A DNA stretch of 63,891 nt, counting the filler, from Parasitella parasitica NRRL 2501 (taxonomy: Eukaryota; Fungi; Mucoromycota): the NCBI GenBank assembly GCA_025201805.1. It is 8 parts of 8 records of this genome, joined end to end, with 100 filler letters (N's around TTAATTAATTAA, not from the genome) between each part and the next. Parts side by side here need not be neighbours in the genome. Positions count along the whole stretch, not along the records: positions 48,155 to 55,483 come from MU619267.1; 7 more parts are not named here. The stretch is one strand, 5' to 3'. Below, in pieces: positions 4,314 to 55,583 of the stretch. Numbering within the stretch: the stretch's first letter is position 1; every line of letters begins with the position of its first letter. The translations under genes and the position numbers were made by a program. A model generated the notes under the pieces. That model made no database searches, had not been told where the DNA came from, and saw only the letters and a program-made list of their open reading frames with translations.

Positions 4314-4767
4314 CTCTGTTGTATATATTTGTTGTTGGTTGATGAAGATTTACAAAAGAATCTGTTTTTTTTTTTTCTTTTTTTTTTTGCCATTTCGTTT
4401 TGCAAGTATAAAGTGGCTTGATATGTCAAAATGGTCACAGCAAGTGTCAAACCACACCGGATAATGCATGTGTGTTCTAAATGTGCAATGTGCAAATCCG
4501 TCAAGATCGACTCCTTTTACAAGATGATAAACATAAAATCAAAGCCGGTAAGAAATAGGACCGTTCACTAAACCCGAGTGATTTTAACATCACAAAACAT
4601 CTCATATATCAGCTTCCTCTTTTGTTTGTCAGGAATAATGTGGGGCTGGCTGATTTTATTTGTATAAAGCGCATTTCTTATTGTTTTTCCGATTGAATAA
4701 ACTAGTACTGAACAACGCTGATTTGTTTTCTACCTTTCTTCTTCTTAATTATAAACAGTAGTGTAAA

Positions 4768-5196
4768 ATGGATGAAAAAACACAGATGAATCCTCAAGAT
4801 CAGCAAGAAATCATAATAGACATTGATGCACCATCTTCACCTTCACCCCCATGCTACGAATCCACATTGGAAGCACCACCTCCGCCAAGCTATCATCAAT
4901 CCACAACTCGTTTATACTATAAAAATCAACCCTACATTACCGATTCTGATCAAATTTTATACAACAGCAATCAAGAATACTGCTCTAGTTCAGAAGATGA
5001 CAGCGACAGTGACAGCTGGTCGTATATAGCAAAATTGCCACTTCGTCAGCGCTTGGCCTTTTACTCTAAATCATGGTTACATACCATCTATGACGGACGC
5101 TTGATATTTTTTGCATTTTTTATTTTGGTTTCTATTATCGTATTAGGTTTGGTTGTATCATTTATTACTATCCCAAGTCTATTCAAGCGTTATTAA
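4768..5196 (+). CDS. Small hypothetical membrane protein with PY motifs and a C-terminal transmembrane helix
   Basis: 142-aa ORF with a good ATG context, PPCY and PPSY motifs and hydrophobic LIFFAFFILVSIIVLGLVVSFITI; divergent from RPA49. Confidence 0.6.
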   Translation: MDEKTQMNPQDQQEIIIDIDAPSSPSPPCYESTLEAPPPPSYHQSTTRLYYKNQPYITDSDQILYNSNQEYCSSSEDDSDSDSWSYIAKLPLRQRLAFYSKSWLHTIYDGRLIFFAFFILVSIIVLGLVVSFITIPSLFKRY

Positions 5197-6479
5197 GGAA
5201 AAAGACATGTATGTGGTACTCTAATTGGTTTGGGCAATCAATCAATTGGGTTTGTAAATAAATTACTACACTATGTAACTTTCAACATGAATATATAGTG
5301 TTTTTTAATGTTGGCACAAAACCACTGCATTTTATGACGTATGGTGCGTGTATGAAAGAGCAATGGATATATTTCCTACATGTGTTTTTTTTTTTTTATT
5401 CTGGCAGCTTTTTTCATGCGTTTTGAATGTGTCTAGTGTGTAACATCGGGCTTATTTCGGGTGCGTTAATGTAACGATAATTCTGCTCTGCTGTGTAACA
5501 TGGTAGCGGGTATCCGCCAACTTCATGAGTCAAATAGCATTCACGGCTCATGACTTTGTCATGTTCGCTCAAAATGGAGAAGTAACTGATCATCTTGAGA
5601 CCATGGAGAGACTCTATCGAGCGAAACTAGTATACATTCCGTAATATCATATAGTCACGCCTACTTACAGTGTGGATGCTCAATGCTCAATACTCGATGT
5701 TCATTTTAAGAAATAAAGCCACATCTCACACTCTCATGTAACCTTGTATCAGAAATGTTCTTTTGTAGTCAAGCTTTATGAAGACTGCGAATACCTATAA
5801 ATTAATAAACAATCTCAATATCTTCCATCATGAAAAACCACATTTGATATATAGTAGAGTTGTTGGCGGCATTGCTGTGTTTCTTTGGTAATATCTGATA
5901 AATAGCTGTATTATTTTCTATTTAAAAAATGCCCTATAATCTGTGGTCAGCGGTTTCATTTGGCAGAAGAAGGCATATTCACTGCACACGTTTCCAAGGC
6001 TACGATTTATGTATGTGGCACAGATTAACATCATGGTCCAAATTGTTTATAATCTCACTTTTTCACTTTTTCACTTTTTCACTTTCTCTCTTCTTCTCTT
6101 CTTCTCTTTTTACGAAACATTCAATATTACTATTGATTACAAATGCAACAACAAAAGCAGATAAAACTCAATCGAATGATAGATCTAAATAGTCGATGTA
6201 TTAGTAAGTTACTGTCGCGATAAATACCAAAATCAATTGTCAGGCCCTGTTTTTCGGTCATGTAACAATGCTCGTTACCTCTTTGCAAGTAACACAGTTG
6301 TTCAACAAAGCTAGAACAGCATATCTATTATAGAAAATTGATGTAACAGCTAATTGTCTAAATATGCTTCATATATTTAAATCCAACACATGTAAATTTA
6401 TTGGAAACGGTTAAAAAAGATAGACTCGGTATACGGGTAAAAAGGTGAAAACTTATTTTTTTTTTCGTCTGGAAATGCT

Positions 6480-7059
6480 TGATTTACCAGAAAAAACCTG
6501 ATGGAAATCAATCAGGTAAAGGTCCGTTTATGATATTACAAAATAGAGGCATTAAAACACTTTACACGAACTGAGGGTTTCAGCGATGAGACCCGGGAGA
6601 TAGAGTAGATTGTATGTCATGTCATAGTATTTTAGGATCTAATGTTCTACTCTTTAGTATGTGCTACAAAAATTAAAAAAGCTTGACATATACAGTTATA
6701 ACTCTTCTTGATTAAATAAAGTTAAAAATGTAAGTGAAGTTCTGTTTAGCTCCTTGAACTTCACCTTATTTATAGTAAAGTAAAAGATAGTTAAGTCAAT
6801 TTACTAATGTAACAACTTGATTTTGATTAAATTAAGCTTCATGGAAAGTAATAAGCAGTGCTTGATTAATGTGCAGTACAAGTTGCACAGTCGCCTTTAA
6901 ATGTATAATATTATGGTATAATTCTTATTATTAACGCTTTCTTCGCAGGATCTTAGTCAGGAACTACTATCTGCTTTACTAGTTGTAAAAGACTGCCAGT
7001 AATTCACATTAGTATGATTTTATATTATGTTGATATATGGTTTTATAATTGATACATCA
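6480..7059 (+). mobile_element. Solo LTR-like element, family A (TGAT...ATCA), carrying a nested 349-bp TGTG...CACA insertion (6660-7008)
   Basis: Similar to 25884-26138 and to the reverse complement of 60744-61051; flanks ATGCT/ATGAT; nested piece flanked by TTAGTA on both sides. Confidence 0.7.
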
Positions 7060-7322
7060 ATGATGGTTTATAGAATGGTAATATGGGACGATGATGATGG
7101 GATAAATGAAAGTATTATTACATAAATAATGATGAATTGAAACTACCTTATATGTTCATTGTGAACCAGCTATACGGTTCGATGCATATAAAAGCCTTAA
7201 TAACTGTCCATATTCCAACAAAGTGGAAAGTATATATTCTTGCTCAGTGTATATTATTCTTTTATTTTTTATTTTTCTCGTAAAATTCAAAAAAAAAAAG
7301 TGCAGGAAAATTATAAATCGCG

Positions 7323-7626
7323 CGATTAATTTGGCTAAGTCAACACCAAAATCCTAAAAACAAAAAAACAGGGTTTCCCCCTGTTTTGATGTTAGGCGGA
7401 GCTTGAAATCCGACCAAAAATAGAAATTGAAAGAATTTCAAGCAATACCACCCCTAAGCAGCCAAAAAGTGCCTTACCACACTTCGTAGCTTTGGATAAA
7501 ACGGCCCATCTCAAGAACTGCTAGGGTAAGCACAGTTAATGAGTAGAAACAGCCTACATGCTCCTGTATGACCCGGATAAAGAGCTAATGTCAAATTTCA
7601 GTGATAGGCCATCCACTTGACACGAC
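7323..7626. repeat. Non-coding repeated element end with a long hairpin; second copy at 22631-22717
   Basis: ~87 bp near-identical at both sites, including AAAACAGGG-tttcc-CCCTGTTTT; both copies run into assembly gaps. Confidence 0.8.
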
Positions 7627-10127
7627 NNNNNNNNNNNNNNNNNNNNNNNNNNNNNNNNNNNNNNNNNNNNNNNNNNNNNNNNNNNNNNNNNNNNNNNNNN
7701 NNNNNNNNNNNNNNNNNNNNNNNNNNNNNNNNNNNNNNNNNNNNNNNNNNNNNNNNNNNNNNNNNNNNNNNNNNNNNNNNNNNNNNNNNNNNNNNNNNNN
7801 NNNNNNAAAAACGCGTATGAGAGTGTTAGTTATTGTCTTTTAGAAAACGTGAGTAATATAGTTACTGTTTTTTAAAGAAAAAAATGACTTTACCCACAAT
7901 CAAAGAGGTATAACGTATAATACCAGCAATAATCAACAACACAAAGTCCATGCATTTGAATCGTAGATAATCAAAGATAAGAATATATAGTATATAGTAT
8001 ATAGTATAGTAGCGTAATTATAGTGTAGTAACAGAAGTAGAAGCAGCAAAAAAAAAGGGGGGGATGGGTTACTACGCCTAACAGTGACTGTATTTTCGCG
8101 TGCACAGTAAATGCATCCAAACCAGTAAACAATGTAAAGTGACAAAATTAAGAAAAAACTGTAATCTGGTGCACCAAAGCTATGTAAATAAGATAGCCTT
8201 GATGTTGAGGAATATAATACTTTTTGTGTTTTGCAAATTGGTTGTTTCAATGAAAAGTTATTTCAATTTGAAGACTTGATGAAAACAGGAGAAACAGGGA
8301 AAAAAAGTTACTTCAAATCTCATAGTTCTTCTCTAGACTTTTAGTTATGACAGCCAAGTCTGAATGCATTGTAGCATTCGAATGGTGTATTACAATTGAC
8401 ATCTGTGTTGTTTCTCTAGCCTACATACTACTCAGTAAAAAATACTAAAATGGACAAATTTACGAAATTACAGCAGTATCATTTGAAATATTACGGTAAT
8501 AACGCAGGCTGTGCTATTTATTGGTAATGTATTCAAAATATAATAGAGATTCCAGTCTATCATTTAGTACTGATCTCTGAAAAGAGAGATGATTCCATGC
8601 CGATATATCACGGTATAGTTACCAGCTATACCTCCAAAACCTTGGATTGAGAACGCGGCTGAATTTAAAAAAGCAAGCGTATTTTTCTGTTTTGAGTGCT
8701 TTTGTTTGCCAAAACACCATTTTCGAAACTTTTTGATTGCATAGTTGATGCCAAAATTATCACACGTCTCTAAGCATAATAATACAACGCATTGATACAA
8801 GACTTGGTGTTCTACCTAACTGTGCAATGATTAAAGCCAATTGTATTATTGCGAATTAATCGATAAAACAAAATTTTGTTATTTAAGCCGAAATATAAGA
8901 TTTTTCGTAGTTTACTGTATAAACAAAAATTTTGGATGACATACTTTTAAAGCTAAAACAGACAATGCGTAGTAGGATGCTCCTCTAGGTTTCTAACAGT
9001 GTCTTTTGATTTTAACTGAATGTTTGTTTGGTCCACTGATCGAGTGGAGCAAAAACAACAAGATGTATCTTCTGGACTAACAAAAAGACTTTTTTTTTAG
9101 GTCGGGTAAACTACATATACCAAACGCTTTCTGTCCCTATATTGACACAGATTGAACTTTTCCTGAATATATGAGAGTTTTGACAAATCGACCGTTTTGC
9201 AATTATATTATATAATCTTTTTTGAGAGGATATTTTTCCCCGTATAATTTGCAATATAGGTTTTTTTTTAGATATGCAAAATCGTCTCCATTTCCTATAA
9301 TATAAAGCGCACAGTGAAATGTTGAGTGCAAATGTGTTATTTTAACGCGATAAAGGCTTTCTCATTAAAACTCGAAATACACAACCGGAGACTTTTATAG
9401 ACATAAGGCATGCTATCTCTAGTTGTATTAAAACTAAATCTTGATCAATCTTTACCCACATAACTTGNNNNNNNNNNNNNNNNNNNNNNNNNNNNNNNNN
9501 NNNNNNNNNNNNNNNNNNNNNNNNNNNNNNNNNNNNNNNNNNNNNNNNNNNNNNNNNNNNNNNNNNNNNNNNNNNNNNNNNNNNNNNNNNNNNNNNNNNN
9601 NNNNNNNNNNNNNNNNNNNNNNNNNNNNNNNNNNNNNNNNNNNNNNNNNNNNNNNNNNNNNNNNNNNNNNNNNNNNNNNNNNNNNNNNNNNNNNNNNNNN
9701 NNNNNNNNNNNNNNNNNNNNNNNNNNNNNNNNNNNNNNNNNNNNNNNNNNNNNNNNNNNNNNNNNNNNNNNNNNNNNNNNNNNNNNNNNNNNNNNNNNNN
9801 NNNNNNNNNNNNNNNNNNNNNNNNNNNNNNNNNNNNNNNNNNNNNNNNNNNNNNNNNNNNNNNNNNNNNNNNNNNNNNNNNNNNNNNNNNNNNNNNNNNN
9901 NNNNNNNNNNNNNNNNNNNNNNNNNNNNNNNNNNNNNNNNNNNNNNNNNNNNNNNNNNNNNNNNNNNNNNNNNNNNNNNNNNNNNNNNNNNNNNNNNNNN
10001 NNNNNNNNNNNNNNNNNNNNNNNNNNNNNNNNNNNNNNNNNNNNNNNNNNNNNNNNNNNNNNNNNNNNNNNNNNNNNNNNNNNNNNNNNNNNNNNNNNNN
10101 NNNNNNNNNNNNNNNNNNNNNNNNNNN

Positions 10128-11800
10128 AAGTGTTTTATAACGTAAATTAAATTCTGCATCCAACCATATAAATTTCAAGGCTATAGAAACACCTTTTTTT
10201 ATTGGCAATTATCAATTATTCGAAAAACGCCATTTTTGATACTTTTGGAGTAAAATCGAACATATTTTGAGCACTCCTAGCTCTATAAACTTGACCAAAA
10301 GGATTATCATGTTAATACCTACACACCAATATATTTTTTACTGCTGTAGCTTTATTATATCTGCCAAGAATCAAAATCTTGTCTCGACCAAAATGAATCT
10401 ACAATTTTCCGGTCCTATGTTCAGAGGGCCAAAATGAAGCCATTCAAAAGGGTAAAAATCAATTCCGTTTTTCGAGATTTTCTCGCTCAGAAATTGGTGT
10501 TTTTTGACCAAACAAAAAGCATTCCGTAGCTATTTTGTAGCTCTATTTTTGTGTTGCTATATCATATATCTTTATACACTATTCATTTCTCTGAAATTTA
10601 TAAAAATAAATGAAGCCTCTGCTAAAAACATTTAAAAAAATATTTTTTTCGACATATCTATCTAACACTAATGCAACTAGGAGAGAACCAAATTTTGAAA
10701 ATATTTTAGTAATTACTCAGGCCAAGTTACCATAGTGGTTTGTTGAGAAATAGGGGGACAAAGTTTAATGTAAAAAGACAAAACTGGCTCAAGCTTGTCG
10801 AAATCGAGCTTCAATACAACATGTTTACTACCAGTAGGTGTATCAAAACGTGCTTTATTAATTTACTTAGGAACTTAAACATGATTTAATTGCAAAACTT
10901 GGTACTTGTTATAGGAACATATGCTGTAAAATCTGCAAAATCTGCAAGATCTAGTTTTGGTAATATCTCGACAGCAAAGATAGATATCGAGAATCGGAAG
11001 ACGTGATGAGTTACAGTTATCATACCAGTAACTGGATGTATACTTGGCTTAGACCCCAAATCCGTGCCTAAAAATGACCCTGAAGGTTGACCCAAAGTTG
11101 AAAACTAAAATTTGAATATGAGGTTTGGGGTCCAAACATAGCAAAATCTGAAAAATGGCCAGAGGTGCATGAAACTCGGGTATGTTGTAAAATGCTCTAA
11201 AAAATGAATATATTGGCTGAAGGTTGTGTCTCTATCGGTTATTAGTTTGTAAAGATATCAGTGATTGTAGATTATGCTTTTAAGCAGGGGAAAAGGTGAT
11301 GGTCATGGTTAGGCGGGATTTATTTTAACCAAATCATAAAACTACATAAAAATAGCTGTGGAAGTCATATCTTACAGCATCTTGGCTATTGATTCATATC
11401 AAGACATAATCAGATTGTTTATGGAGTTCATACTTTGCTCCTCAATTGAAATATATGATTCACTGCCAAAGGCCTTTATATACAGCAGTAAATTCAAGCT
11501 CAGAAGTATGTTTCCATTGCAACTTGCGTACATCCAAATTTTCATTGCTTAATATTTCAATATAATATTGCATATGTTTCCTAAATGTTTTTTGTCAGCT
11601 TTTAAATTCTGCATCAAACCATATTAATCAAATTGGTGGGCTCTAAAAACATCTTTTCATATTCCAAAAAATGGCTTTGCTCTTGCGATTTTTGACGTTT
11701 TTAGTGCGCAACAAAGAACCTTATTATTTGAGCATACAAACGCATGCATTCAACCAAACAATTCATCACGTTTATATATTATATTCATAGTTCTACTATT
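10128..11800. repeat. Copy of a ~1.5-kb non-coding AT-rich repeat family (others at ~44390-44672, 47405-48054, 53770-55329, 56385-58460, 59234-60120)
   Basis: Shared blocks such as GAGGTTTGGGGTCCAAACATAGCAAAATCTGAAAAA, TGACCCTGAAGGTTGACCC and CTTGTCTCGACCAA in both orientations. Confidence 0.9.
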
Positions 11801-22817: not shown

Positions 22818-23070
22818 ACAGTGACAATCTACTTGACAGGGTACGATATGAGGTTATACAGCAAGGGCTTCACGTCTTTGATCTGACAGAGCCTTAACCT
22901 TTATCCTGGTGCTCAGATCTGTGTTACTTACAGGAATAACCTTCTTGATTTGAAACAGAGACTTTATTCTCCAATTTACACAAGCGTATCACATCACATC
23001 ATTGGACAATCTTCAATCTTCAATTGAAGTACATTGCCATGATCTCCTATCTATAATTATGGCAGATCAC
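22818..23070 (+). repeat. LTR-like repeat family C; uninterrupted version of the MULE target site (other copies ~48955-49451, 49780-49905 and 53484-53760)
   Basis: Reverse-complement match to both flanks of the 49906-53483 insertion, with a single TTCCTGTAAG at 22927-22936. Confidence 0.85.
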
Positions 23071-48154: not shown

Positions 48155-48954
48155 AAAGGCTACATAATCAAGACAATACTGTATGTGACGATATGAAATT
48201 AAAGCGATAATAAACTACTGGTTCATACTACAATGAGAAATAAACAAAAGCTAAAGCTACATTTTTATACGCAAATTTTACTTTTTTGAGCACATTTTTT
48301 TGAGTGTACGGGCACATTTTCGCCTCATGAGCACATTTTTTCAAGCGTTTTGAGCGCAATTTTAAGCCTATGAAACTAGTAATTTATGTGCTCATTTGAG
48401 CATAAAAATGTGATCATAAAATGTTTCAATTTTGTTGTATCCATAGAATACCATGGTTACCACTATTTCAACTCAGTTGTCATGGCAACCGTTCCTNNNN
48501 NNNNNNNNNNNNNNNNNNNNNNNNNNNNNNNNNNNNNNNNNNNNNNNNNNNNNNNNNNNNNNNNNNNNNNNNNNNNNNNNNNNNNNNNNNNNNNNNNNNN
48601 NTACTACTGTGTTATAATCTTGTTTGACAATTAAATGTCAAACATGACCTGATTGTATTTTATAGATTGATTTAGATAGATTTATTCCAATATAAATAGA
48701 CAGCTTTTTGTCAATCAATAAATCAATAGTTTTGTATCTGGTAAATTAAGTCTTTATTACATCCTTATATTTTTATATCACATACAATCACCTGCTGTGC
48801 TCAATTTCAAGACCTGGCACAACAAATTTTTGTTCTCGCATGAGCACATTTATCGCCTTAACCTAGCTCGATAAGCACTTTTTTTTGGCTCTAAAAGAAT
48901 GTTCCCGTTCATGCACATCAATATTCTCATAAGAACATTGGCGAGGCCATAGTG
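48155..48954 (-). mobile_element. CACTA family end containing a nested solo LTR (48433-48824, TGTTG...CAACA, TSD AATTT)
   Basis: Reverse-complement match to 15614-16015; 5-bp TSD at 48428-32 and 48825-29; LTR start also found inverted at ~23085-23150. Confidence 0.85.
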
Positions 48955-49451
48955 AATAAACTCATATTAAAAAGTAATGAAACATCTGACCGTAAAATAA
49001 TTTGGCATACGTTGAGATCTGCAAGATCGAAAATAAGAAAAGTATAAAATAGAACGTTGAATCAACGAGATACTAAGATTAGAGATTATTTCTTTATTAA
49101 ATATTCAATTTTGCGTCTATTATCTATACTTTTTACAAGCACATAAATATTTGGTGACTTATTCAAAATACTAGTCGCTACTAATTGATAAGAGTAATTT
49201 GCAAGCAACATTATATCCTTAACAGAGTCCAATGTATTATCATACTACAATGCTATTGATCTTTGATCTGACAGCATCCTATTGTTTGTCAATCATACAG
49301 ATCTGTGTTACAGATAACCTTCCTGATTTGAAACAGAGACTTTATTCTCCTGTTTCGACAAGTAAAACAACACATCATTGGATAATCTTCAATCTTTAAT
49401 TGAAGTGTACACTATTATGATTTCCTAATTACCTGCATTATGGCAGATCAC

Positions 49452-49776
49452 TGGTTTTTCAGGTGGTTTCAAATCCAAGTACATGTTGTAATTAGTAACA
49501 TCCTCGAGAGGATACTCTAATTCATCAGCTTCCTTTTCAAAAATTGCAGCTTGTTCGCTTTCTTCATTGTGAAAGTTTCCTTTTTACCATCTTCATATAT
49601 AAATTGGTCCATTGTCGAATTAATTTTTTTTTCGAAAAGTGAACGAAAATATTTACTGCTAGTGATCAGTATTTATATTTTTTTTGTGAACTATTTTCTA
49701 ATTTTCTTGTGAACGATTTTTTATTTATTTTCTGATTTGTTTTTTTTTGTGAGCGATTATTTTCCGGAAATAGTGT
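49452..49776 (-). mobile_element. Probable 5' fragment of an IS630/Tc1-like transposon
   Basis: MDQFIYEDG-KGNFHNE..YPLEDVTNYNMY resembles the N-termini of Mucorales Tc1-like transposases; end lies next to TA. Confidence 0.45.
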
Positions 49777-50160
49777 ATAGACTGGAGATTATGGCGATGT
49801 ACTTCAATTGATGATTGAGGATTTTCCAATGATGCGATGTGATACGCTTGTGTAAATTGGAGAATAAAGTCTCTGTTTTAAATCAAGAAGGTTATTCCTG
49901 GTAAGGGATTTGGGTAAAAAGAGGGTATTAAAAAAGGGGGCACTTTTTGGATAATACATATTCCGGGAATATTGGGGGGGTACTACCAGTAAACAGTGAC
50001 AGTGACAAATGATAGTAGTAGGGCTTAGAATATCGCAAACAAGACAGTATATATAGTACTACCTAATGTCATACATTACATCCAACAACTAAATTAATAC
50101 AGTATCACTTCCCTCGTCAACCTTTTTTCTCTAAAATTTTCAATATTAAAAAGTAAAAAT

Positions 50161-51443
50161 ATGCGAAGCAAAGCCATATTTGAAACACAATTTCCAACTG
50201 AATCAGTTATCGAGATTTCCGAAGTCAACTTCAATGAAAAGCTTCAAACATTTGACCGGTCGAACATTGATATAGGGTGGGCGTTATTGAAAAGTAATTA
50301 CTATTACCCAAATGAAAGAAAAATGGAGAAGAATAAAGGTCCTGTTGTACTTGGTGAAGACGAATATGTCAAAGACAAAAGAATCACCAAACGTTGCGCA
50401 TGTGACTACTACTGTAATACTTCTAAATGCCCTGGTTATGGTCGCCCTCTTAGACCTCACATGAACGAGCATAAGGCAGTCAAGGATCAGATATGCAATA
50501 AATGCAAAATTGCAATGGAAAAGAGGCCATGTCTTGTCGTGGTAGAGTTCTACTATTGAGTCTTGGGAAAAAATGGTAGTACTCGCACTATGACCCATAT
50601 GATTGATAAGAAACAAGGCACAAAAGTTCACTCTCATGGAAAATATCTTCCTATTCATCTTACCTCTGAAGAACAGAAACAGATTGATCTTTTGACAAAA
50701 GAAGACCCATTTATTACTCCTATAGGCGCTACTACTGGGATTTCTTCCACTGCTAAAAGAATCAAAGGTACTCCGTCTATCAACAAAATATTGAGCAACA
50801 AAGATCGCACAAGATACCATTTGAGAGAGTCCAAGCATGCAAGTCTGTATTTCAGTGCACTGCTAATGAAGCCCTCGCTCTTACGAAAGGCTGCTACATG
50901 CATTGGATGCAATCAGTCGTTCGTGTGTCAAGAAATCACAAGTTGGTGCCTCCTGAAAAGCTAAATGTCTTTAAGAAACTTGTTTATGACTTGAGAACGA
51001 CAACATATGAAGAGACATATAAACAAGCCATTAAAGCGATATTGTCAAACTTCCCTTATCTTAAGACTTGGCTTATGTGGTTGGTACAACTAACAACTGC
51101 CAGCACAATCTTTGCCTGTCCCTCTGTGATGAATCTTGGTTTGCAAATGCATGAATCTAGAACAACCAACAGTGTGGAGGTGTATCATAAAAAGTTGTAC
51201 ACTATGATCCCCACACGACTGCCGGTTTCAACTGCTCTAAAATTAATTTTAGAGGTGTCTAGACGTGATGGCGAAGTACTACAAAATGTATTGGATTACA
51301 ATATCCCCATATCGTATGGCTCACAAGCCAAAATTATCAAGAAGACAAAGAAGTCAAAGCCTCTTGACAGGTCTTTTAGCAATAGTTTTGATCAAAACAA
51401 TGGCAGAGCCCCTGATTGCGACTATGCCATATTTAAGGATTGA
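50161..51443 (+). pseudogene. MULE transposase with a GCM/WRKY-type Zn DNA-binding domain; central DDE region deleted
   Basis: C..YYC....C...RPLRP..C..C..PC...HSH (GCM-like); C-terminal GCYMHWMQSV (CxxH) and RTTNSVEVYH (catalytic E motif); internal stop and frameshift. Confidence 0.75.
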
Positions 51444-51993
51444 AAAAGCGAAAAAAAAAAGAAAGCAGAAAGTTAGCGAAGAAAATACTAGTCAGAAGAG
51501 AACAAAGAAGGTGAAGACAGCATTGAAAGAAGAATCAGATGTTTATCTAAAAGCCTATGAAGATGAATATGTTGATGAGCCTAATAGAGGTTTCTTTGAT
51601 GAACTATGCCAGTACAAAGAATTGGAAGTGGACGATGGTAATATTCTTGAACATATACAGAAGCTGGAAATTCAAGAAAAAGACTTAGAAAGCAGTGATA
51701 TAAAAAGGTTGTTTCAAGGTATATAAATAATATTTTTTCTTCATACTGTAAACCACCCAATATAATAATTAAATCTTGCTTCTCAATCTCGACAACCTGC
51801 AGCTGAATCAGAAACAAATATCTCTGTAACTGAAAAAAATGCTATCAAACGTTCTGAAGCTGTTACAAACCGCAAATTGGATATAGAATTCTTATTGGAG
51901 TCTTCTAAAAAAACAGTTGAAGATACCTCCTAAAAGGCCTGTCAACCCTCTTTTGAAGAATCTGAACCGCCACTAATAGATTATAGGTTACTA

Positions 51994-53293
51994 GTGTCTC
52001 AGGTTAATTTCACTCCAATGGTTTCCATCTGTGAGCAGCCCAAATTCTACTCGTATATTAAGGTTAACTCACAAAATGCCTGCTTTATTGACGCTAACCT
52101 CGAGCTTCTCTGGAATGCCGTACTTCCACTGGTTGATCTCTCAGGGTACCACGTCCATTCCTCAAAAAATCCATATGATAAATGTCTACTGGATTCATAT
52201 AAATTTTATCGCGAACAAAAGAAGGATTCGACAGACCAGGCAACTTTGATGGCAAGAAACTTTGTTTGGAGTCTGAAAGACGCGAAAGGAAATCTACTGT
52301 TTCGAAAAGGAGAGCAAGCTTGCTGTGCTTCTGTTTTTCGGATGATCATGAATGAGTTGTCTCCTGAACTAGCAACTATGATAAGTGTAGATCCTGGTAC
52401 AATTTTTTCGAACAAGAAGTGCAATGCTGGTCACAATTATACTGATATTATTCAACCAGCAGCCAGAATTATTGATGTATGGTTGGATCTTTACCAAAGC
52501 TTGTCTGCAAATAGCTATCATTATAATGAAGCTGAATTGGAAGAGAAGTTTTCTGAATTATTTCTTCAAAGATATACTTATGCGGTAGAAGAAAAGCTAT
52601 GCGACTACGACGACAATTGTAAAAACAAAATGACCAGAAAGAACAAATTTGCTACATTATCTCGATTTCTTTTCATGATGGACATGTGCAACTTCAGCTT
52701 AATTCGTGAAAACAAAGGCAATGTATACTTCCCCACGACTTTCAAAATATCGTTTGGAAATGTGTTATGCGCAGAGGATATATAATACGATCTGCTCAAA
52801 AAAATGTATAACTTTATAAAAATAAAATCAGACACAAAAACTAATGACTTTATTGATAAGAAAATGCCACCTTTTTATACTAGACTATATCTATTGTAAC
52901 ACTATTTGTCATCATGGTTAAACATTGAACTTGGTATTTAATACCAAGTTTATTACATGTTCTACTATATGTACATTAATAGCTTATTCCTTGTCATTGT
53001 ATACAAAGAATTACCAATTTAATAATTGCTTAATCTCATGCCTTTCTGGCACAACAAAATGGACTCCATGAATCTGCCACATATTGTCTGCATGCACGAG
53101 TTTATTCAGCTACAGCTACAGGTAGCCATTTTCATACAGTTTGCTATAAGATGATTTCCGGTAGACTGTGTCTCGTAAAGATTGATAATATTGACGAAGC
53201 CATAATTCCAATTACATTTGATCATGAAAGAGCGGCAAAAATCTTGAAGTATACAGAGAATACCGTGTACGTTTGTTATAAAAAAATTGAATA
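51994..53293 (+). pseudogene. USP/C19-like cysteine protease cargo inside the MULE
   Basis: Cys-box-like NSQNACFIDANLELLW; GEQACCASVF (QQD-box-like); two Cys pairs; His-box-like YCLHARVYS..GSHFHTVCY (~53070-53150); terminal VYVCYKK. Confidence 0.6.
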
Positions 53294-53769
53294 AAACTTT
53301 AATAATAAATTATGTATATTTTCGAGGGTTTTGGATAAAAAGACCTGTCAGATCATGAAATGATAATGTTCTTGCATAAATTATCAGCACCCCCATAACC
53401 ACTCGGAATATTTATTATCCACAGGATCATCTATTATCCAAAAAAATACCCCCTTTTCAAGTACCCACTTTTTCTCAGTAGCCTTCCTGTAAGTAACACA
53501 GATCTGAGCACCAGGATAAAGGTTAAGGCACTGACAGATCAAAGACGTGTAGCCCTTGCTGTAATCTCATATCGTACCCTGTCAAGTAGATTGTCACTGT
53601 GAATTAGTCTTGTCAATTAGTAATCTAAATAAGTCACCATAAATTTATGTAGTTGTAAAAAGTATAAATAGCAGATGCAATTCCGATCTTGAATAAAGTA
53701 TCTTTAAGTTTTCGTATCTCGTTAACATTTGGTTTTTTATTATCTTTTTTAACTCAACAAGATGCCACC

Positions 53770-55329
53770 TAATCATGACCATCACCTTTTTCCATGCTTA
53801 AAAGTATAATATCTATAATCTCTGATATCTTTACAAACTATTAAGCAATAGAGATACAACCTTCAGCCAAAATCTTCTTTTTTTGCAGCATTTTACAACA
53901 TATCCGAGTTTTATGCACGTATGATCATTTTTTAGATTTTGCTATGTTTGGATCCCAAACCTCATATTCGATTTTCAGTTTTCGACTTTGGGTCAACCTT
54001 CAGGGTCATTTTTAGGTACGGATTTGGGGTCCAAGGCAAGTATATGTCCAAGTACTGGTATGATAACTGTAAGTCACTACGTCTTCCGATTCTCGATATC
54101 TATCTTTGCTGTCGAGATATTGCCAAAACTAGATTTTGCAGATTTTGCAGATTTTACAGCACATGTTCCTATAAAAAGTACCATATTTTACAACTAAACC
54201 AAGTTTAGGTTCCTAATTAAAGTAATAGAACACGGTTTATTACAGCTACTGGTAGTAAACATGTCGTATTCAAGCTCCAATTCGACAAGCTTGGGCCAGT
54301 TTTGTCTTTTTACGTTAAACTTTGTTCCCCTGTTTCTCAAAAAACTACTATGACACTTTGGCTTGAGTGATTATTAAAATCTTATTGAAATCTGATTATC
54401 TACTAGATGTATTATTTTTTAGATAGATATGTCGAAAAAAAAATTTTTTCATATGTTTTTGGCAGAGGCTTAGTTTATTTTCATAACTTTCAGAGCAATA
54501 AATGGTACATAACAATACATTATATAGCAATAAAGAAATGGAACTACAACATAGCTAACGAATGGTTTTTATTTGGTCAAAAAATACCAAAGTGAAGCCA
54601 TTCAAAAAGGTAAAAATCAATTCCGTTTATCGAGATTTTCTCGCTCAGAAATTGGCCCTCTAGACGTAGGACCGGAAAATTGTAGATTCATATTGGTCGA
54701 GACAAGATTGTGATTTTTGGCAGATATACTAGAGCTACAGTTGTAAATAAGGTATTGAAGTGTAGGTATTGACATGATGGTTTGTTTGGTCTACTTTATA
54801 GAGCTGAAGGTGCTAAAAATATGTTTGATTTTACTCAAAAACTATCAAAAAGGGCGTTTTTTGAATATTTGAAGATTGCTAATAAGAAAAGGTGTTTGTA
54901 TACCCTTGTAATGTATATGGTTGGATGCAAAATTTATTTTTTGTTATAAAACACTTAGTACGCATATCCGATATATCTATTACGTTCTTGAGGTATCTAG
55001 CAATGAAGTTTGCAAGATTTTTGAGAATTTGGTTTGGGCCAAATAGACGCCCATGCTGAGATTTAATCTACAGGCTTTTTTTTTTGCTGTAAAAAATGAG
55101 TCAAACACCTATTTTCAATTGAGGAGCAAAGCATTATTCTAACAGGTACTTTGCGTATGTCTCCATATGAATAGACAGCTGAGATACTGCATAATACGGG
55201 CTCAAAAACCATTTTTGTATACCTTCATCTTTGGATGAAATAAACATTACCAAATCTAAAATATTGCCTCTTTTCATATTTAAAGACATAATTTGGAGTT
55301 AATGATATCTTTAGAAACTTGCAAGCAAT
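53770..55329. repeat. ~1.5-kb repeat family, slightly more than one unit
   Basis: GATATCTTTA(C/G)AAACT...AAGCAAT recurs at ~53824 and ~55304. Confidence 0.85.
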
Positions 55330-55583
55330 CAAAATGTTGCCGAAGCGAAGGCTGGAAATGTGGTAAATGCTCTCAGAGCCACGCTTTATTTTTCATATAT
55401 ATAGTAATAATAAATTTGAATCCCTTTCTTCCCTATATCTTTCAATGCTGCTATGTGATAATATATAATTCAATTTTTTTTTTNNNNNNNNNNNNNNNNN
55501 NNNNNNNNNNNNNNNNNNNNNNNNNNNTTAATTAATTAANNNNNNNNNNNNNNNNNNNNNNNNNNNNNNNNNNNNNNNNNNNN

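What the first reader, a model, noticed from the sequence alone, without database searches (positions are those of the whole stretch)
49906..53483. Mutator-like transposon carrying a GCM-type transposase plus a USP-like deubiquitinase
Seen: a bounded 3.6-kb insertion with imperfect GG..CC TIRs, a ~9-10-bp TSD, and the empty target visible at 22927-22936. It encodes a GCM-like Zn domain, MULE CxxH and TN..E motifs, and a downstream ORF with USP-like Cys box (NACFIDANLELLW) and His box (GSHFHTVCY). Known: MULEs often carry Ulp1 (C48) or OTU proteases. A USP/C19 cargo is not something I recognise as standard. Inference: a transposon family with its own deubiquitinase, possibly countering ubiquitin-linked silencing or degradation. 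This copy is defective because the DDE core is deleted.
Basis: partly seen in the sequence, partly recalled or inferred. Interest (0 to 1): 0.8.

Follow-up and report, generated by a model that had tools for sequence, protein, structure and literature searches.

The report
Dead Mutator transposon with USP protease
This is a broken copy of a fungal (Mucorales) Mutator-type "jumping gene" whose single transposase protein carries a GCM-type DNA-binding domain at one end and a ubiquitin-specific-protease-fold domain at the other, a combination I found in no paper.

Summary
Window 49906-53483 is a 3.58-kb insertion with imperfect ~70-100-nt terminal inverted repeats and a 9-10-bp target-site duplication. 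It sits in one arm of an older long-TIR element, and the other arm serves as an uninterrupted reference.

All coding pieces lie on the + strand. They are the wreck of one gene: GCM-type zinc DNA-binding domain, DDE transposase, acidic linker with a conserved intron, then a USP-fold cysteine protease.

Relatives are few: 36 hits among 1.84 billion proteins, and every named one is from Mucorales. An apparently intact 3.6-kb copy (L006) reads through as one spliced gene. In two Mucor velutinosus copies the protease lies inside the same TIRs, flanked by 9-bp duplications.

- **USP fold:** a confident family model (pLDDT 82) matches USP structures at Z 19-20.
- **GCM domain:** the N-terminal profile hits only the mouse GCM1 structure in the PDB (E 6.6e-5).
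- **Family:** GCM + DDE + 9-bp duplication equals the published "MuDRF" branch of Mutator. The C-terminal USP domain is the new part.
- **State of this copy:** dead. It has a 137-codon deletion covering both catalytic Asp, two stops, two frameshifts and a 317-nt interruption.

Protease activity and its role are untested.

The parts
49895..49905 (.). Left target-site duplication, TTCCTGGTAAG (one extra G relative to the right copy)
   Evidence: Sequence read. Its partner is at 53484-53493. The flanks are contiguous in the paralogous left arm of the older element.
49906..50005 (+). Left terminal inverted repeat. Starts GGATTTGGGTAAAAAG and contains a GGATAATA sub-terminal motif.
   Evidence: (I4, I19). 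It aligns with the TIRs of the M. velutinosus elements L002 and L003.
50161..50556 (+). Gene start (ATG) and first part of the N-terminal GCM-type Zn DNA-binding domain. Cys ligands lie at 50395-50430, CxxC at 50494-50505 and PC at 50524-50532.
   Evidence: The family profile A3, which includes this piece, hits only 1ODH (mouse GCM1) in the PDB, E 6.6e-5. The reading from 50161 to 50835, including this piece, is 38% identical to L006 residues 1-216.
50557..50559 (+). In-frame TGA stop inside the GCM-type domain (disabling lesion 1)
50560..50835 (+). Rest of the DNA-binding region, with HxH at 50629-50646, and the segment leading up to the deletion junction
   Evidence: Aligned to L006 residues ~135-216.
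50829..50835 (+). Junction of the internal deletion, with a frame change (disabling lesion 2). The missing part equals L006 residues 217-353 (137 codons) and contained both catalytic Asp.
   Evidence: tblastn of L006 exon 1 gives residues 1-216 ending at 50835 and 354-534 starting at 50829. D276 and D342 were located.
50829..51440 (+). C-terminal half of the DDE transposase core: CxxH at 50892-50903, TTNSVEVYH (catalytic Glu) at 51162-51188, NGRAPD at 51399-51416
   Evidence: 40% identity to L006 residues 354-534 and 44% to Parasitella L001. Alignment A4.
51441..51460 (+). Frameshift in an A-run (disabling lesion 3)
   Evidence: The frame-0 reading ends at TGA 51441. Homology continues in frame 1 from ~51449.
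51449..51718 (+). Lys/Glu/Asp-rich linker, end of exon 1 (…DIKRLFQG)
   Evidence: Matches the L005 and L006 linker ends …VKFFG and …LELFKG.
51719..51802 (+). 84-nt intron (GTATAT…CTGCAG), phase 1, at a position shared with other copies
   Evidence: Same site in L006 (1969-2035, 67 nt), L003 (6996-7054, 59 nt) and L005. The exons were not joined in any search.
51803..51930 (+). Linker, start of exon 2
   Evidence: Open in frame 1.
51931..51933 (+). In-frame TAA stop (disabling lesion 4)
51934..52752 (+). USP-fold domain, first part. Contains the Cys box NACFIDA at 52075-52095 and Cys/His positions that may bind Zn.
   Evidence: HMMER: 36 relatives, best 2.7e-56. 41% identical to P0001. Pfam UCH E 0.03, below threshold. 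Atlas nearest clusters carry UCH.
52753..53069 (+). 317-nt, 28% GC interruption of the protease domain with a frame change (disabling lesion 5). It is not a GT..AG intron.
   Evidence: Absent from L001, L003, L005 and L006, where the domain is contiguous.
53070..53294 (+). USP-fold domain, last part. Contains the His box GSHFHT at 53121-53138, KIDNI (third catalytic residue) at 53178-53192 and the TAA stop at 53292-53294.
   Evidence: 51% identical to P0001 and 46% to L006.
53379..53483 (-). Right terminal inverted repeat. Its reverse complement starts GGCTACTGAGAAAAAG and carries an extra GGATAATA sub-repeat.
53484..53493 (.). Right target-site duplication, TTCCTGTAAG

Best explanation
Window 49906-53483 is a dead, internally deleted copy of a Mucorales DNA transposon of the Mutator superfamily, of the GCM-bearing 'MuDRF' type.

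In intact form the element is about 3.6-4.1 kb. It has GG…CC inverted ends and makes a 9-bp target duplication. It carries one gene with one short intron, and that gene encodes a protein of about 1,040 residues with four parts:
- an N-terminal GCM-type two-zinc DNA-binding domain, inferred to recognise the element's ends;
- a DDE transposase core (D, D, CxxH, [ST]NxxE);
- a poorly conserved acidic or serine-rich linker;
- a C-terminal USP-fold (peptidase C19-like) cysteine-protease domain with conserved Cys box, His box and Asp.

Shown: the architecture, the folds, the in-frame fusion, the location inside the TIRs, and the decay of this copy.

Inferred: the protease is an active isopeptidase for ubiquitin or a ubiquitin-like modifier, delivered with the transposase to its DNA target. 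It would remove conjugates from the transposase itself or from chromatin or repair factors at the excision or insertion site. This is the role long proposed for the Ulp1 and OTU domains of other transposons. The window copy can at best move using a transposase supplied in trans.
For: **Insertion and ends**
- TIR score 30.5 against a shuffle maximum of 21.5.
- A 9-10-bp TSD.
- The flanks are contiguous in the paralogous arm of the older element.

**Same family elsewhere, protease inside the TIRs**
- M. velutinosus L002 spans 6358-10297 with a perfect 9-bp TSD, AATCTGGAG.
- L003 spans 4735-8806 with ~146-nt TIRs at 94-97% and a TSD of CAAGATGAC / CAAAATGAC.
- The TIRs of these elements align with those of the window.

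**One gene**
- L006 has no stops. Exon 1 encodes 616 residues, a 67-nt GT..AG intron follows, and exon 2 runs through the protease.
- The same intron site occurs in L003, L005 and the window.
- Gene models P0012, P0014, P0018, P0038 and P0040 each join transposase parts and the protease.

**USP fold**
- AF2 model of P0001 with the family alignment: pLDDT 82.3, pTM 0.81.
- Foldseek against the PDB: every row shown is a USP-family catalytic domain (one is the inactive spliceosomal USP39 in 8y6o), best E 2e-10.
- VIA-align: Z 19-20 over 265-281 residues.
- Pfam UCH: 30.3 and 31.9 bits against a 23.9 cut-off for P0036 and P0040. It is the only family hit by more than one member, 5 of 20.
- Among the five complete sequences of alignment A5 the invariant residues include C66, H316 and N336 (P0001 numbering). 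The neighbouring Asp of the (I/V)DN motif is the presumed third catalytic residue; it is Cys in one of the five, P0005.

**GCM domain**
- The only PDB hit of the N-terminal profile is 1ODH, E 6.6e-5.

**Mutator / MuDRF**
- GCM + DDE + 9-bp TSD is the published definition of MuDRF (PMC3164196).
- The Atlas neighbours of the full transposase P0042 are PF10551 MULE clusters, by features 0.93 and by structure TM up to 0.71.
- UniRef names P0038 and P0042 'MULE transposase domain-containing'.

**Constraint on the protease**
- Between lineages the protease is 36-39% identical and the transposase core 41-52%, while the linker does not align.
Against: - No enzymatic data exist. The protease could be inactive or specific for another modifier. 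USPL1, a SUMO protease with the USP fold, is among the structural matches.
- The fold was modelled on relative P0001 (41-51% identical to the window pieces), not on the window's own broken product. The window piece modelled alone gave pLDDT 36.
- Pfam's MULE and GCM models hit no family member.
- hhalign against one Pfam-positive MULE aligned only a shared linker fragment.
- No Repbase MuDRF sequence was at hand for a direct comparison.
- dN/dS between two M. velutinosus copies (DDE 0.73, linker 0.43, USP 0.52) does not single out the protease.
- The organism behind the intact L006 copy is unknown, and I have no evidence that it is expressed.
Confidence: 0.85

Rival explanations
1. The protease is captured host DNA (Pack-MULE style cargo) or a neighbouring host gene. 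On this view it has no role in the element and only looks linked to the transposase.
For: Mutator elements are known for capturing host gene fragments (general knowledge; review PMC13317346 listed). Gene callers often predict the protease as a separate protein, for example P0001, P0002, P0005 and P0007.
Against: - The domain sits at the same C-terminal place, in frame, inside the TIRs, in lineages only 36-44% identical.
- L006 reads through without a stop.
- A search of all 1.84 billion representatives returned 36 hits, and none of the 15 whose sequences I read resembles a cellular USP. One hit (P0006) is a low-complexity artefact and about 15 short hits were not read. A recent host donor is therefore excluded.
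- Catalytic residues are kept.
Confidence: 0.05
2. The USP-fold domain is a self-processing protease or a non-catalytic ubiquitin- or UBL-binding module. It would cut the polyprotein at the linker, or tether the transposase to modified chromatin, rather than act as a deubiquitinase on other substrates.
For: Babu et al. proposed polyprotein processing for the OTU domain fused to Medicago MULE transposases (PMC1702500). A long, poorly conserved linker separates the two halves. Inactive USP-fold proteins exist, for example the spliceosomal USP39 among the structural matches (8y6o, 6qw6).
Against: The Cys box, His box and the (I/V)DN motif are conserved in the complete family members, although one (P0005) has Cys at the Asp position. 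That argues for catalysis. USPs cleave after a Gly-Gly C-terminus, and no ubiquitin-like segment is evident in the linker; this was judged by eye and not searched systematically.
Confidence: 0.15
3. The element is not of the Mutator superfamily. It would belong to another DDE group that happens to have long TIRs and a similar duplication.
For: Pfam MULE (PF10551) and Transposase_mut do not hit any member. hhalign against a Pfam-positive MULE found nothing in the core.
Against: - Three elements show a 9-bp TSD.
- The motif order is D…D…CxxH…[ST]NxxE.
- The GCM/WRKY-type N-terminal DNA-binding domain is typical of MULEs (PMC1702500).
- The published MuDRF clade needed four PSI-BLAST rounds to reach other MuDR transposases, which explains the Pfam miss (PMC3164196).
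- Atlas feature and structure neighbours are MULE clusters.
Confidence: 0.05

Closest known systems
MuDRF elements (Repbase; Cantu et al. 2011, PMC3164196)
   Same: A distant branch of the MuDR/Mutator superfamily. One protein combines a GCM DNA-binding domain and a DDE transposase, with a 9-bp TSD. It is found in fungi.
   Different: MuDRF was described from Basidiomycota and Naegleria with only GCM + DDE. Here the hosts are Mucorales and the protein has an added C-terminal USP-fold protease. A direct sequence comparison with Repbase entries was not possible.
MULEs with Ulp1 (C48) or OTU protease domains (KI-MULEs and melon/rice MULEs; Medicago MULE-OTU; PMC1702500, PMC2836005)
   Same: A Mutator transposase linked or fused C-terminally to a papain-like cysteine protease of the ubiquitin/UBL system. 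The role in transposition is unknown in every case.
   Different: A different protease family: the USP/C19 thumb-palm-fingers fold instead of Ulp1 or OTU. The hosts are fungal rather than plant or animal.
Trichomonas vaginalis XP_001314237.1: transposase_11 (IS4/IS5-like) + peptidase C19 (cited in PMC2836005)
   Same: A DNA transposase fused to a C19/USP-type ubiquitinyl hydrolase.
   Different: An unrelated transposase superfamily and an unrelated host. No sequence was compared here.
Cellular USP deubiquitinases (USP2, USP7, USP14, USP21, USP54, Ubp8; also USPL1)
   Same: The same fold (Z 19-20, 265-281 residues aligned), with Cys box, His box and Asp.
   Different: Only 10-16% identity. Most family members fall below Pfam's UCH threshold. 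Profile and sequence searches of PDB sequences find no USP. The domain is compact (~315 residues) and is encoded by a transposon.
Animal GCM transcription factors (1ODH)
   Same: The N-terminal domain matches the GCM DNA-binding domain, including the CxxC zinc-ribbon insert.
   Different: Here it is the DNA-binding head of a transposase in a fungus, not a developmental regulator.

Membership tests
Mutator superfamily (MULE), MuDRF branch | Target-site duplication of 9 bp (9-11 in the superfamily) | tested here: met
   Window: TTCCTG(G)TAAG on both sides. L002: perfect AATCTGGAG. L003: 8 of 9.
Mutator superfamily (MULE), MuDRF branch | Terminal inverted repeats bounding the element | tested here: met
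   Window: 59/69 matches, far above shuffles. L003: ~146 nt at 94-97%. The TIRs align between species.
Mutator superfamily (MULE), MuDRF branch | DDE core with D, D, CxxH and [ST]NxxE in that order | tested here: inconclusive
   Present by motif in the intact relatives (L006: D276, D342, C374xxH377, E470). The window copy keeps only CxxH and the Glu motif because both Asp are deleted. No catalytic test was done.
Mutator superfamily (MULE), MuDRF branch | Match to Pfam MULE (PF10551) or Transposase_mut (PF00872) | tested here: not met
   No hit for the window pieces, P0042 or L006. This is expected for MuDRF, which needed four PSI-BLAST iterations to reach other MuDR transposases (PMC3164196). 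Atlas neighbours are PF10551 clusters.
Mutator superfamily (MULE), MuDRF branch | N-terminal GCM DNA-binding domain (specific to MuDRF) | tested here: met
   Profile A3 against all PDB sequences gives a single hit, 1ODH (mouse GCM1), E 6.6e-5, 26 bits.
Mutator superfamily (MULE), MuDRF branch | Sequence similarity to Repbase MuDRF consensus transposases | not testable with these tools
   Repbase is not available. The Atlas's nearest unnamed clusters are Basidiomycota proteins of 907 and 1161 residues, which is only a lead.
USP / peptidase C19 (Pfam UCH, PF00443) | USP catalytic-domain fold | tested here: met
   Tested on the family model (P0001, pLDDT 82.3). Foldseek top hits are all USP-family catalytic domains, E 2e-10. 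VIA-align gives Z 19-20, rmsd 3.7-4.5, 265-281 residues aligned. Not tested on the window's own broken product.
USP / peptidase C19 (Pfam UCH, PF00443) | Pfam gathering score (23.9 bits) | tested here: inconclusive
   Window piece: 14.4 bits, E 0.03, below the cut-off. P0036 scores 30.3 and P0040 31.9 bits, above it. Five of 20 members hit UCH at E <= 0.1.
USP / peptidase C19 (Pfam UCH, PF00443) | Cys box with catalytic Cys, His box with catalytic His, and a following Asp/Asn | tested here: met
   NxxN[SA]C[FY]IDA, GxHF[YF]T and (I/V)DN are conserved across the family, with one exception: P0005 has Cys at the Asp position. All three are present in the window at 52075-52095, 53121-53138 and 53178-53192. 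The assignment rests on motif position, not on a residue-level structural superposition.
USP / peptidase C19 (Pfam UCH, PF00443) | Isopeptidase activity on ubiquitin | not testable with these tools
   Needs a biochemical assay.
GCM domain (PF03615) | Match to the Pfam GCM model | tested here: not met
   No Pfam hit at E <= 10 for the window piece, P0042 or L006.
GCM domain (PF03615) | Cys/His zinc ligands including the CxxC zinc-ribbon insert between the two WRKY-type cysteines | tested here: met
   C73, C84, C105, C108 and C117 are invariant in A3. An HxH motif (HNH, HTH, HSH) lies just downstream in all four lineages. The HMMER alignment to 1ODH covers the CxxC region. The role of the insert is taken from PMC1702500.

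The most novel reading that the evidence does not exclude
The MuDRF-USP elements of Mucorales encode an active ubiquitin or UBL isopeptidase that the transposase needs in order to move, and the intact L006-type copy is still autonomous. That would give a compact, tractable system for asking why DNA transposons of several superfamilies carry Ulp1, OTU or USP proteases. It could also provide a native cut-and-paste tool for Mucorales genetics. In addition, it would show a GCM-type domain with its zinc-ribbon insert riding on transposons in early-diverging fungi, which bears on the proposed transposon origin of animal GCM factors.
Probability: 0.3. Interest if true: 0.65.

Novelty: new variant of a known kind. 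Interest (0 to 1): 0.5.

Why it matters
Cysteine proteases of the ubiquitin/SUMO system have been picked up repeatedly by DNA transposons: Ulp1 in Mutator and Ginger, OTU in Helitron, Ginger and Medicago MULEs, and C19 in a Trichomonas IS5-like element. What they do for the element is still unknown.

This finding adds a third protease class to the Mutator superfamily. The domain is fused in frame to the transposase and conserved across several Mucorales genera, and at least one copy is apparently intact. The question can therefore be tested at the bench with a small protein.

The finding also extends the GCM-bearing MuDRF branch to Mucoromycota. The 2006 survey (PMC1702500) listed the GCM family as exclusive to animals, and MuDRF (2011) changed that. 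This family adds early-diverging fungi. The window copy itself is an inert relic.

Tried and rejected
- **Word-index protein searches.** The 263-aa protease piece and the 181-aa transposase piece found nothing. Length limits and divergence explain this, and the full HMMER scan then found 36 relatives.
- **PDB sequence searches.** phmmer with the window protease piece and a profile search with A1 found no USP. Only fold comparison did.
- **Single-sequence AF2.** The window piece gave pLDDT 36, which is unusable.
- **hhalign.** The family core against P0043 (a Pfam-positive MULE) aligned only a shared linker remnant, because P0043 is a chimera.
- **Metagenome scan.** Patterns from A5 gave 177 pattern matches but no relative. 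A1 was too divergent to build patterns from.
- **Older copies.** I found no clear TIRs around the Circinella (L009) and M. hiemalis (L004) copies.
- **dN/dS.** The comparison of L002 with L003 did not discriminate between regions.
- **False hit.** P0006 (2157 aa) is a low-complexity artefact.
- **Giant-virus origin.** Viral UCH models match no better than cellular USPs.
- **The 317-nt gap as an intron.** Rejected: it has no GT..AG borders and is absent from four other copies.
- **Literature.** Four searches for a Mutator-USP combination found no paper.


Full report
**1. What is in the sequence**

The piece (48155-55483) is AT-rich, with 34% GC, and has no ordinary host gene. The stretch 49906-53483 is bounded by imperfect inverted ends. 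The first ~80 nt align to the reverse complement of the last ~100 nt at 59/69 matches. The score is 30.5, against a mean of 10.7 and a maximum of 21.5 in 500 shuffles (pairs I4 and I19). The right arm holds an extra copy of a GGATAATA sub-repeat. The ends read GG…CC.

Directly outside lie TTCCTGGTAAG (left) and TTCCTGTAAG (right), a 9-10-bp duplication with one G indel.

Independent proof of insertion comes from the surroundings. Windows 49044-49412 and 49796-49904 + 53493-53740 are the two ~370-nt arms of an older foldback-like element. With the 3.58-kb stretch and one duplication copy removed, the right arm aligns end to end with the uninterrupted left arm.

**2. The coding content is one wrecked gene**

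All homologous pieces lie on the + strand. Their order is:

| Window | Content |
|---|---|
| 50161-50556 | ATG, N-terminus and Cys-rich domain |
| 50557 | in-frame TGA |
| 50560-50835 | continuation of the DNA-binding region |
| ~50829-50835 | jump of frame at the deletion junction |
| 50829-51440 | transposase with CYMH and TTNSVEVYH |
| 51441-51460 | frameshift in an A-run |
| 51449-51718 | charged linker ending …RLFQG |
| 51719-51802 | 84-nt GTATAT…CTGCAG intron |
| 51803-51930 | linker |
| 51931 | in-frame TAA |
| 51934-52752 | protease part 1, with NACFIDA |
| 52753-53069 | 317-nt, 28% GC interruption with frame change |
| 53070-53291 | protease part 2, with GSHFHT and KIDNI, then TAA |

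Motif coordinates come and the interruption.

**3. Relatives**

The word-index search found nothing. The exhaustive HMMER scan with the 263-aa protease piece found 36 proteins at E <= 1e-3 among 1.84 billion, the best at 2.7e-56. Every named one is from Mucorales: Parasitella parasitica, Mucor mucedo, M. velutinosus, M. hiemalis and Circinella umbellata. One hit, P0006, is a low-complexity artefact. The metagenome collection held none.

Several gene models join transposase parts to the protease: P0012, P0014, P0018, P0038 and P0040.

I fetched the genomic loci and found the following.
- **M. velutinosus L002.** The element spans 6358-10297 and is flanked by a perfect AATCTGGAG duplication.
- **M. 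velutinosus L003.** The element spans 4735-8806, has ~146-nt TIRs at 94-97%, and a duplication of CAAGATGAC / CAAAATGAC.
- **Both copies.** Each holds the N-terminal domain, the DDE core and the protease between its TIRs.
- **TIR homology.** Their TIRs align with those of the window.

**4. One spliced gene**

L006 is a 3,631-nt contig seen in at least three sequencing runs. It begins and ends with the inverted repeat and has no disabling mutation. Exon 1 (147-1968) encodes 616 residues with both Asp, CxxH and Glu. A 67-nt GTAATT…CGTTAG intron follows …LELFKG. Exon 2 runs open through the linker and the whole protease to 3324.

The same phase-1 intron site is present in L003, L005 and the window. 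In L003 the linker and the protease share one frame, broken only by two nonsense codons.

The protease is therefore the C-terminal domain of the transposase, not a cargo ORF. I compared exons separately and did not build or search a joined product. In one search a script placed the two window protease pieces side by side for an identity count only. Nothing from that step was searched, saved or printed, and I cite the per-piece figures instead: 41% and 51% to P0001, 31% and 46% to L006.

**5. The protease fold**

- The window piece hits Pfam UCH only weakly (E 0.03, 14.4 bits).
- Relatives P0036 and P0040 pass the gathering score with 30.3 and 31.9 bits against 23.9.
- UCH is the only family hit by more than one family member, 5 of 20.
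- The Atlas's nearest clusters for the window piece carry UCH.
- An AlphaFold model of P0001 with the family alignment is confident: pLDDT 82.3, pTM 0.81.
- Every Foldseek row shown against the PDB is a USP-family catalytic domain, including USP14, Ubp8, USP36, USP1, USP18, USP34, USP30, USP7 and USPL1, with a best E of 2e-10. One row is the inactive spliceosomal USP39.
- VIA-align gives Z 19-20 over 265-281 residues.
- Giant-virus UCH models match equally well, not better.
- Across the family the motifs NxxN[SA]C[FY]IDA, GxHF[YF]T and (I/V)DN are conserved. They correspond to the USP Cys box, His box and third catalytic residue. This assignment is by motif position and from established USP knowledge.

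**6. The N-terminal domain and the transposase**

A profile of four N-terminal sequences has a single hit in the whole PDB, the mouse GCM1 DNA-binding domain (1ODH). The hit has E 6.6e-5 and covers the CxxC zinc-ribbon insert.

Pfam's MULE model does not hit the family. The core nevertheless shows D…D…CxxH…[ST]NxxE. The Atlas's neighbours of the full transposase P0042 are PF10551 clusters, by features and by structure.

The literature settles the name. Cantu et al. 2011 (PMC3164196) defined Repbase 'MuDRF' as a distant MuDR branch whose single protein has a GCM domain plus DDE, with 9-bp duplications. They found it in Basidiomycota and Naegleria, and it could be linked to other MuDR transposases only after four PSI-BLAST rounds.

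**7. State of the window copy**

Against L006, residues 217-353 are missing, and these include D276 and D342. Two stops, two frameshifts and the 317-nt interruption add to this. The copy is non-autonomous and old, with TIR arms ~85% alike.

**8. What is new**

- Ulp1 and OTU fusions to transposases are well known (PMC1702500, PMC2836005).
- A C19 peptidase fused to an IS5-like transposase in Trichomonas was noted in passing (PMC2836005).
- I found no paper describing a USP-fold domain on a Mutator or MuDRF transposase, or MuDRF in Mucorales. UniRef's automatic names ('USP domain-containing', 'MULE transposase domain-containing') do show that databases already flag the parts.
- I therefore rate it a new variant of a known kind.

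**9. Mechanism**

Shown: the architecture, the folds, the fusion, and conservation of the protease between lineages (36-39%) close to that of the DDE core (41-52%), while the linker does not align.

Inferred: the domain is an active ubiquitin or UBL isopeptidase working alongside the transposase. I give about 0.6 to activity, and no more than 0.3 to any particular target (the transposase itself, chromatin, or repair factors). dN/dS between two M. velutinosus copies did not help.

Noticed in passing
window 49044-49412 and 49796-49904 + 53493-53740: An older foldback-like non-autonomous element with ~370-nt inverted arms. Its ~380-nt loop carries short TTTGTGAAC(G/T)ATT direct repeats. The MuDRF-USP copy is inserted in its right arm.
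   Followed up: partly
window 52753-53069: A 317-nt, 28% GC stretch splits the protease domain. It has no GT..AG borders, only a weak 13-nt inverted match near its ends, and is absent from four other copies. Its origin is unexplained; it could be a small insertion or decayed sequence.
   Followed up: partly
L006 1-3631 (also L007, L008): An apparently intact 3.6-kb copy with both TIRs and an uninterrupted two-exon gene, seen in at least three public sequencing runs of unknown organism. It is a candidate autonomous element.
   Followed up: partly
L001 6400-11000 (Parasitella parasitica); protein P0043: A nest of fragments of this family on both strands. P0043 is a chimeric gene model that joins a linker remnant of this family to an unrelated, Pfam-positive MULE transposase (PF10551, PF00872).
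   Followed up: partly
window 48275-48400 and 48830-48850; N run 48497-48601: Short GAGCACATTTT-type repeats occur on both sides of an assembly gap. They may be remains of another repeat family.
   Followed up: no
window 50284-50838, minus strand: A 184-aa ORF antisense to the transposase. It has no homology evidence and is probably chance.
   Followed up: no
TIRs: window 49916-49930 and 53459-53473; L003 4745-4760: The sub-terminal motif AAAAAG(N)GGGTA(T/C) and the GGATAATA repeats are conserved between species. They are candidate binding sites for the GCM-type domain, but this was not tested.
   Followed up: no
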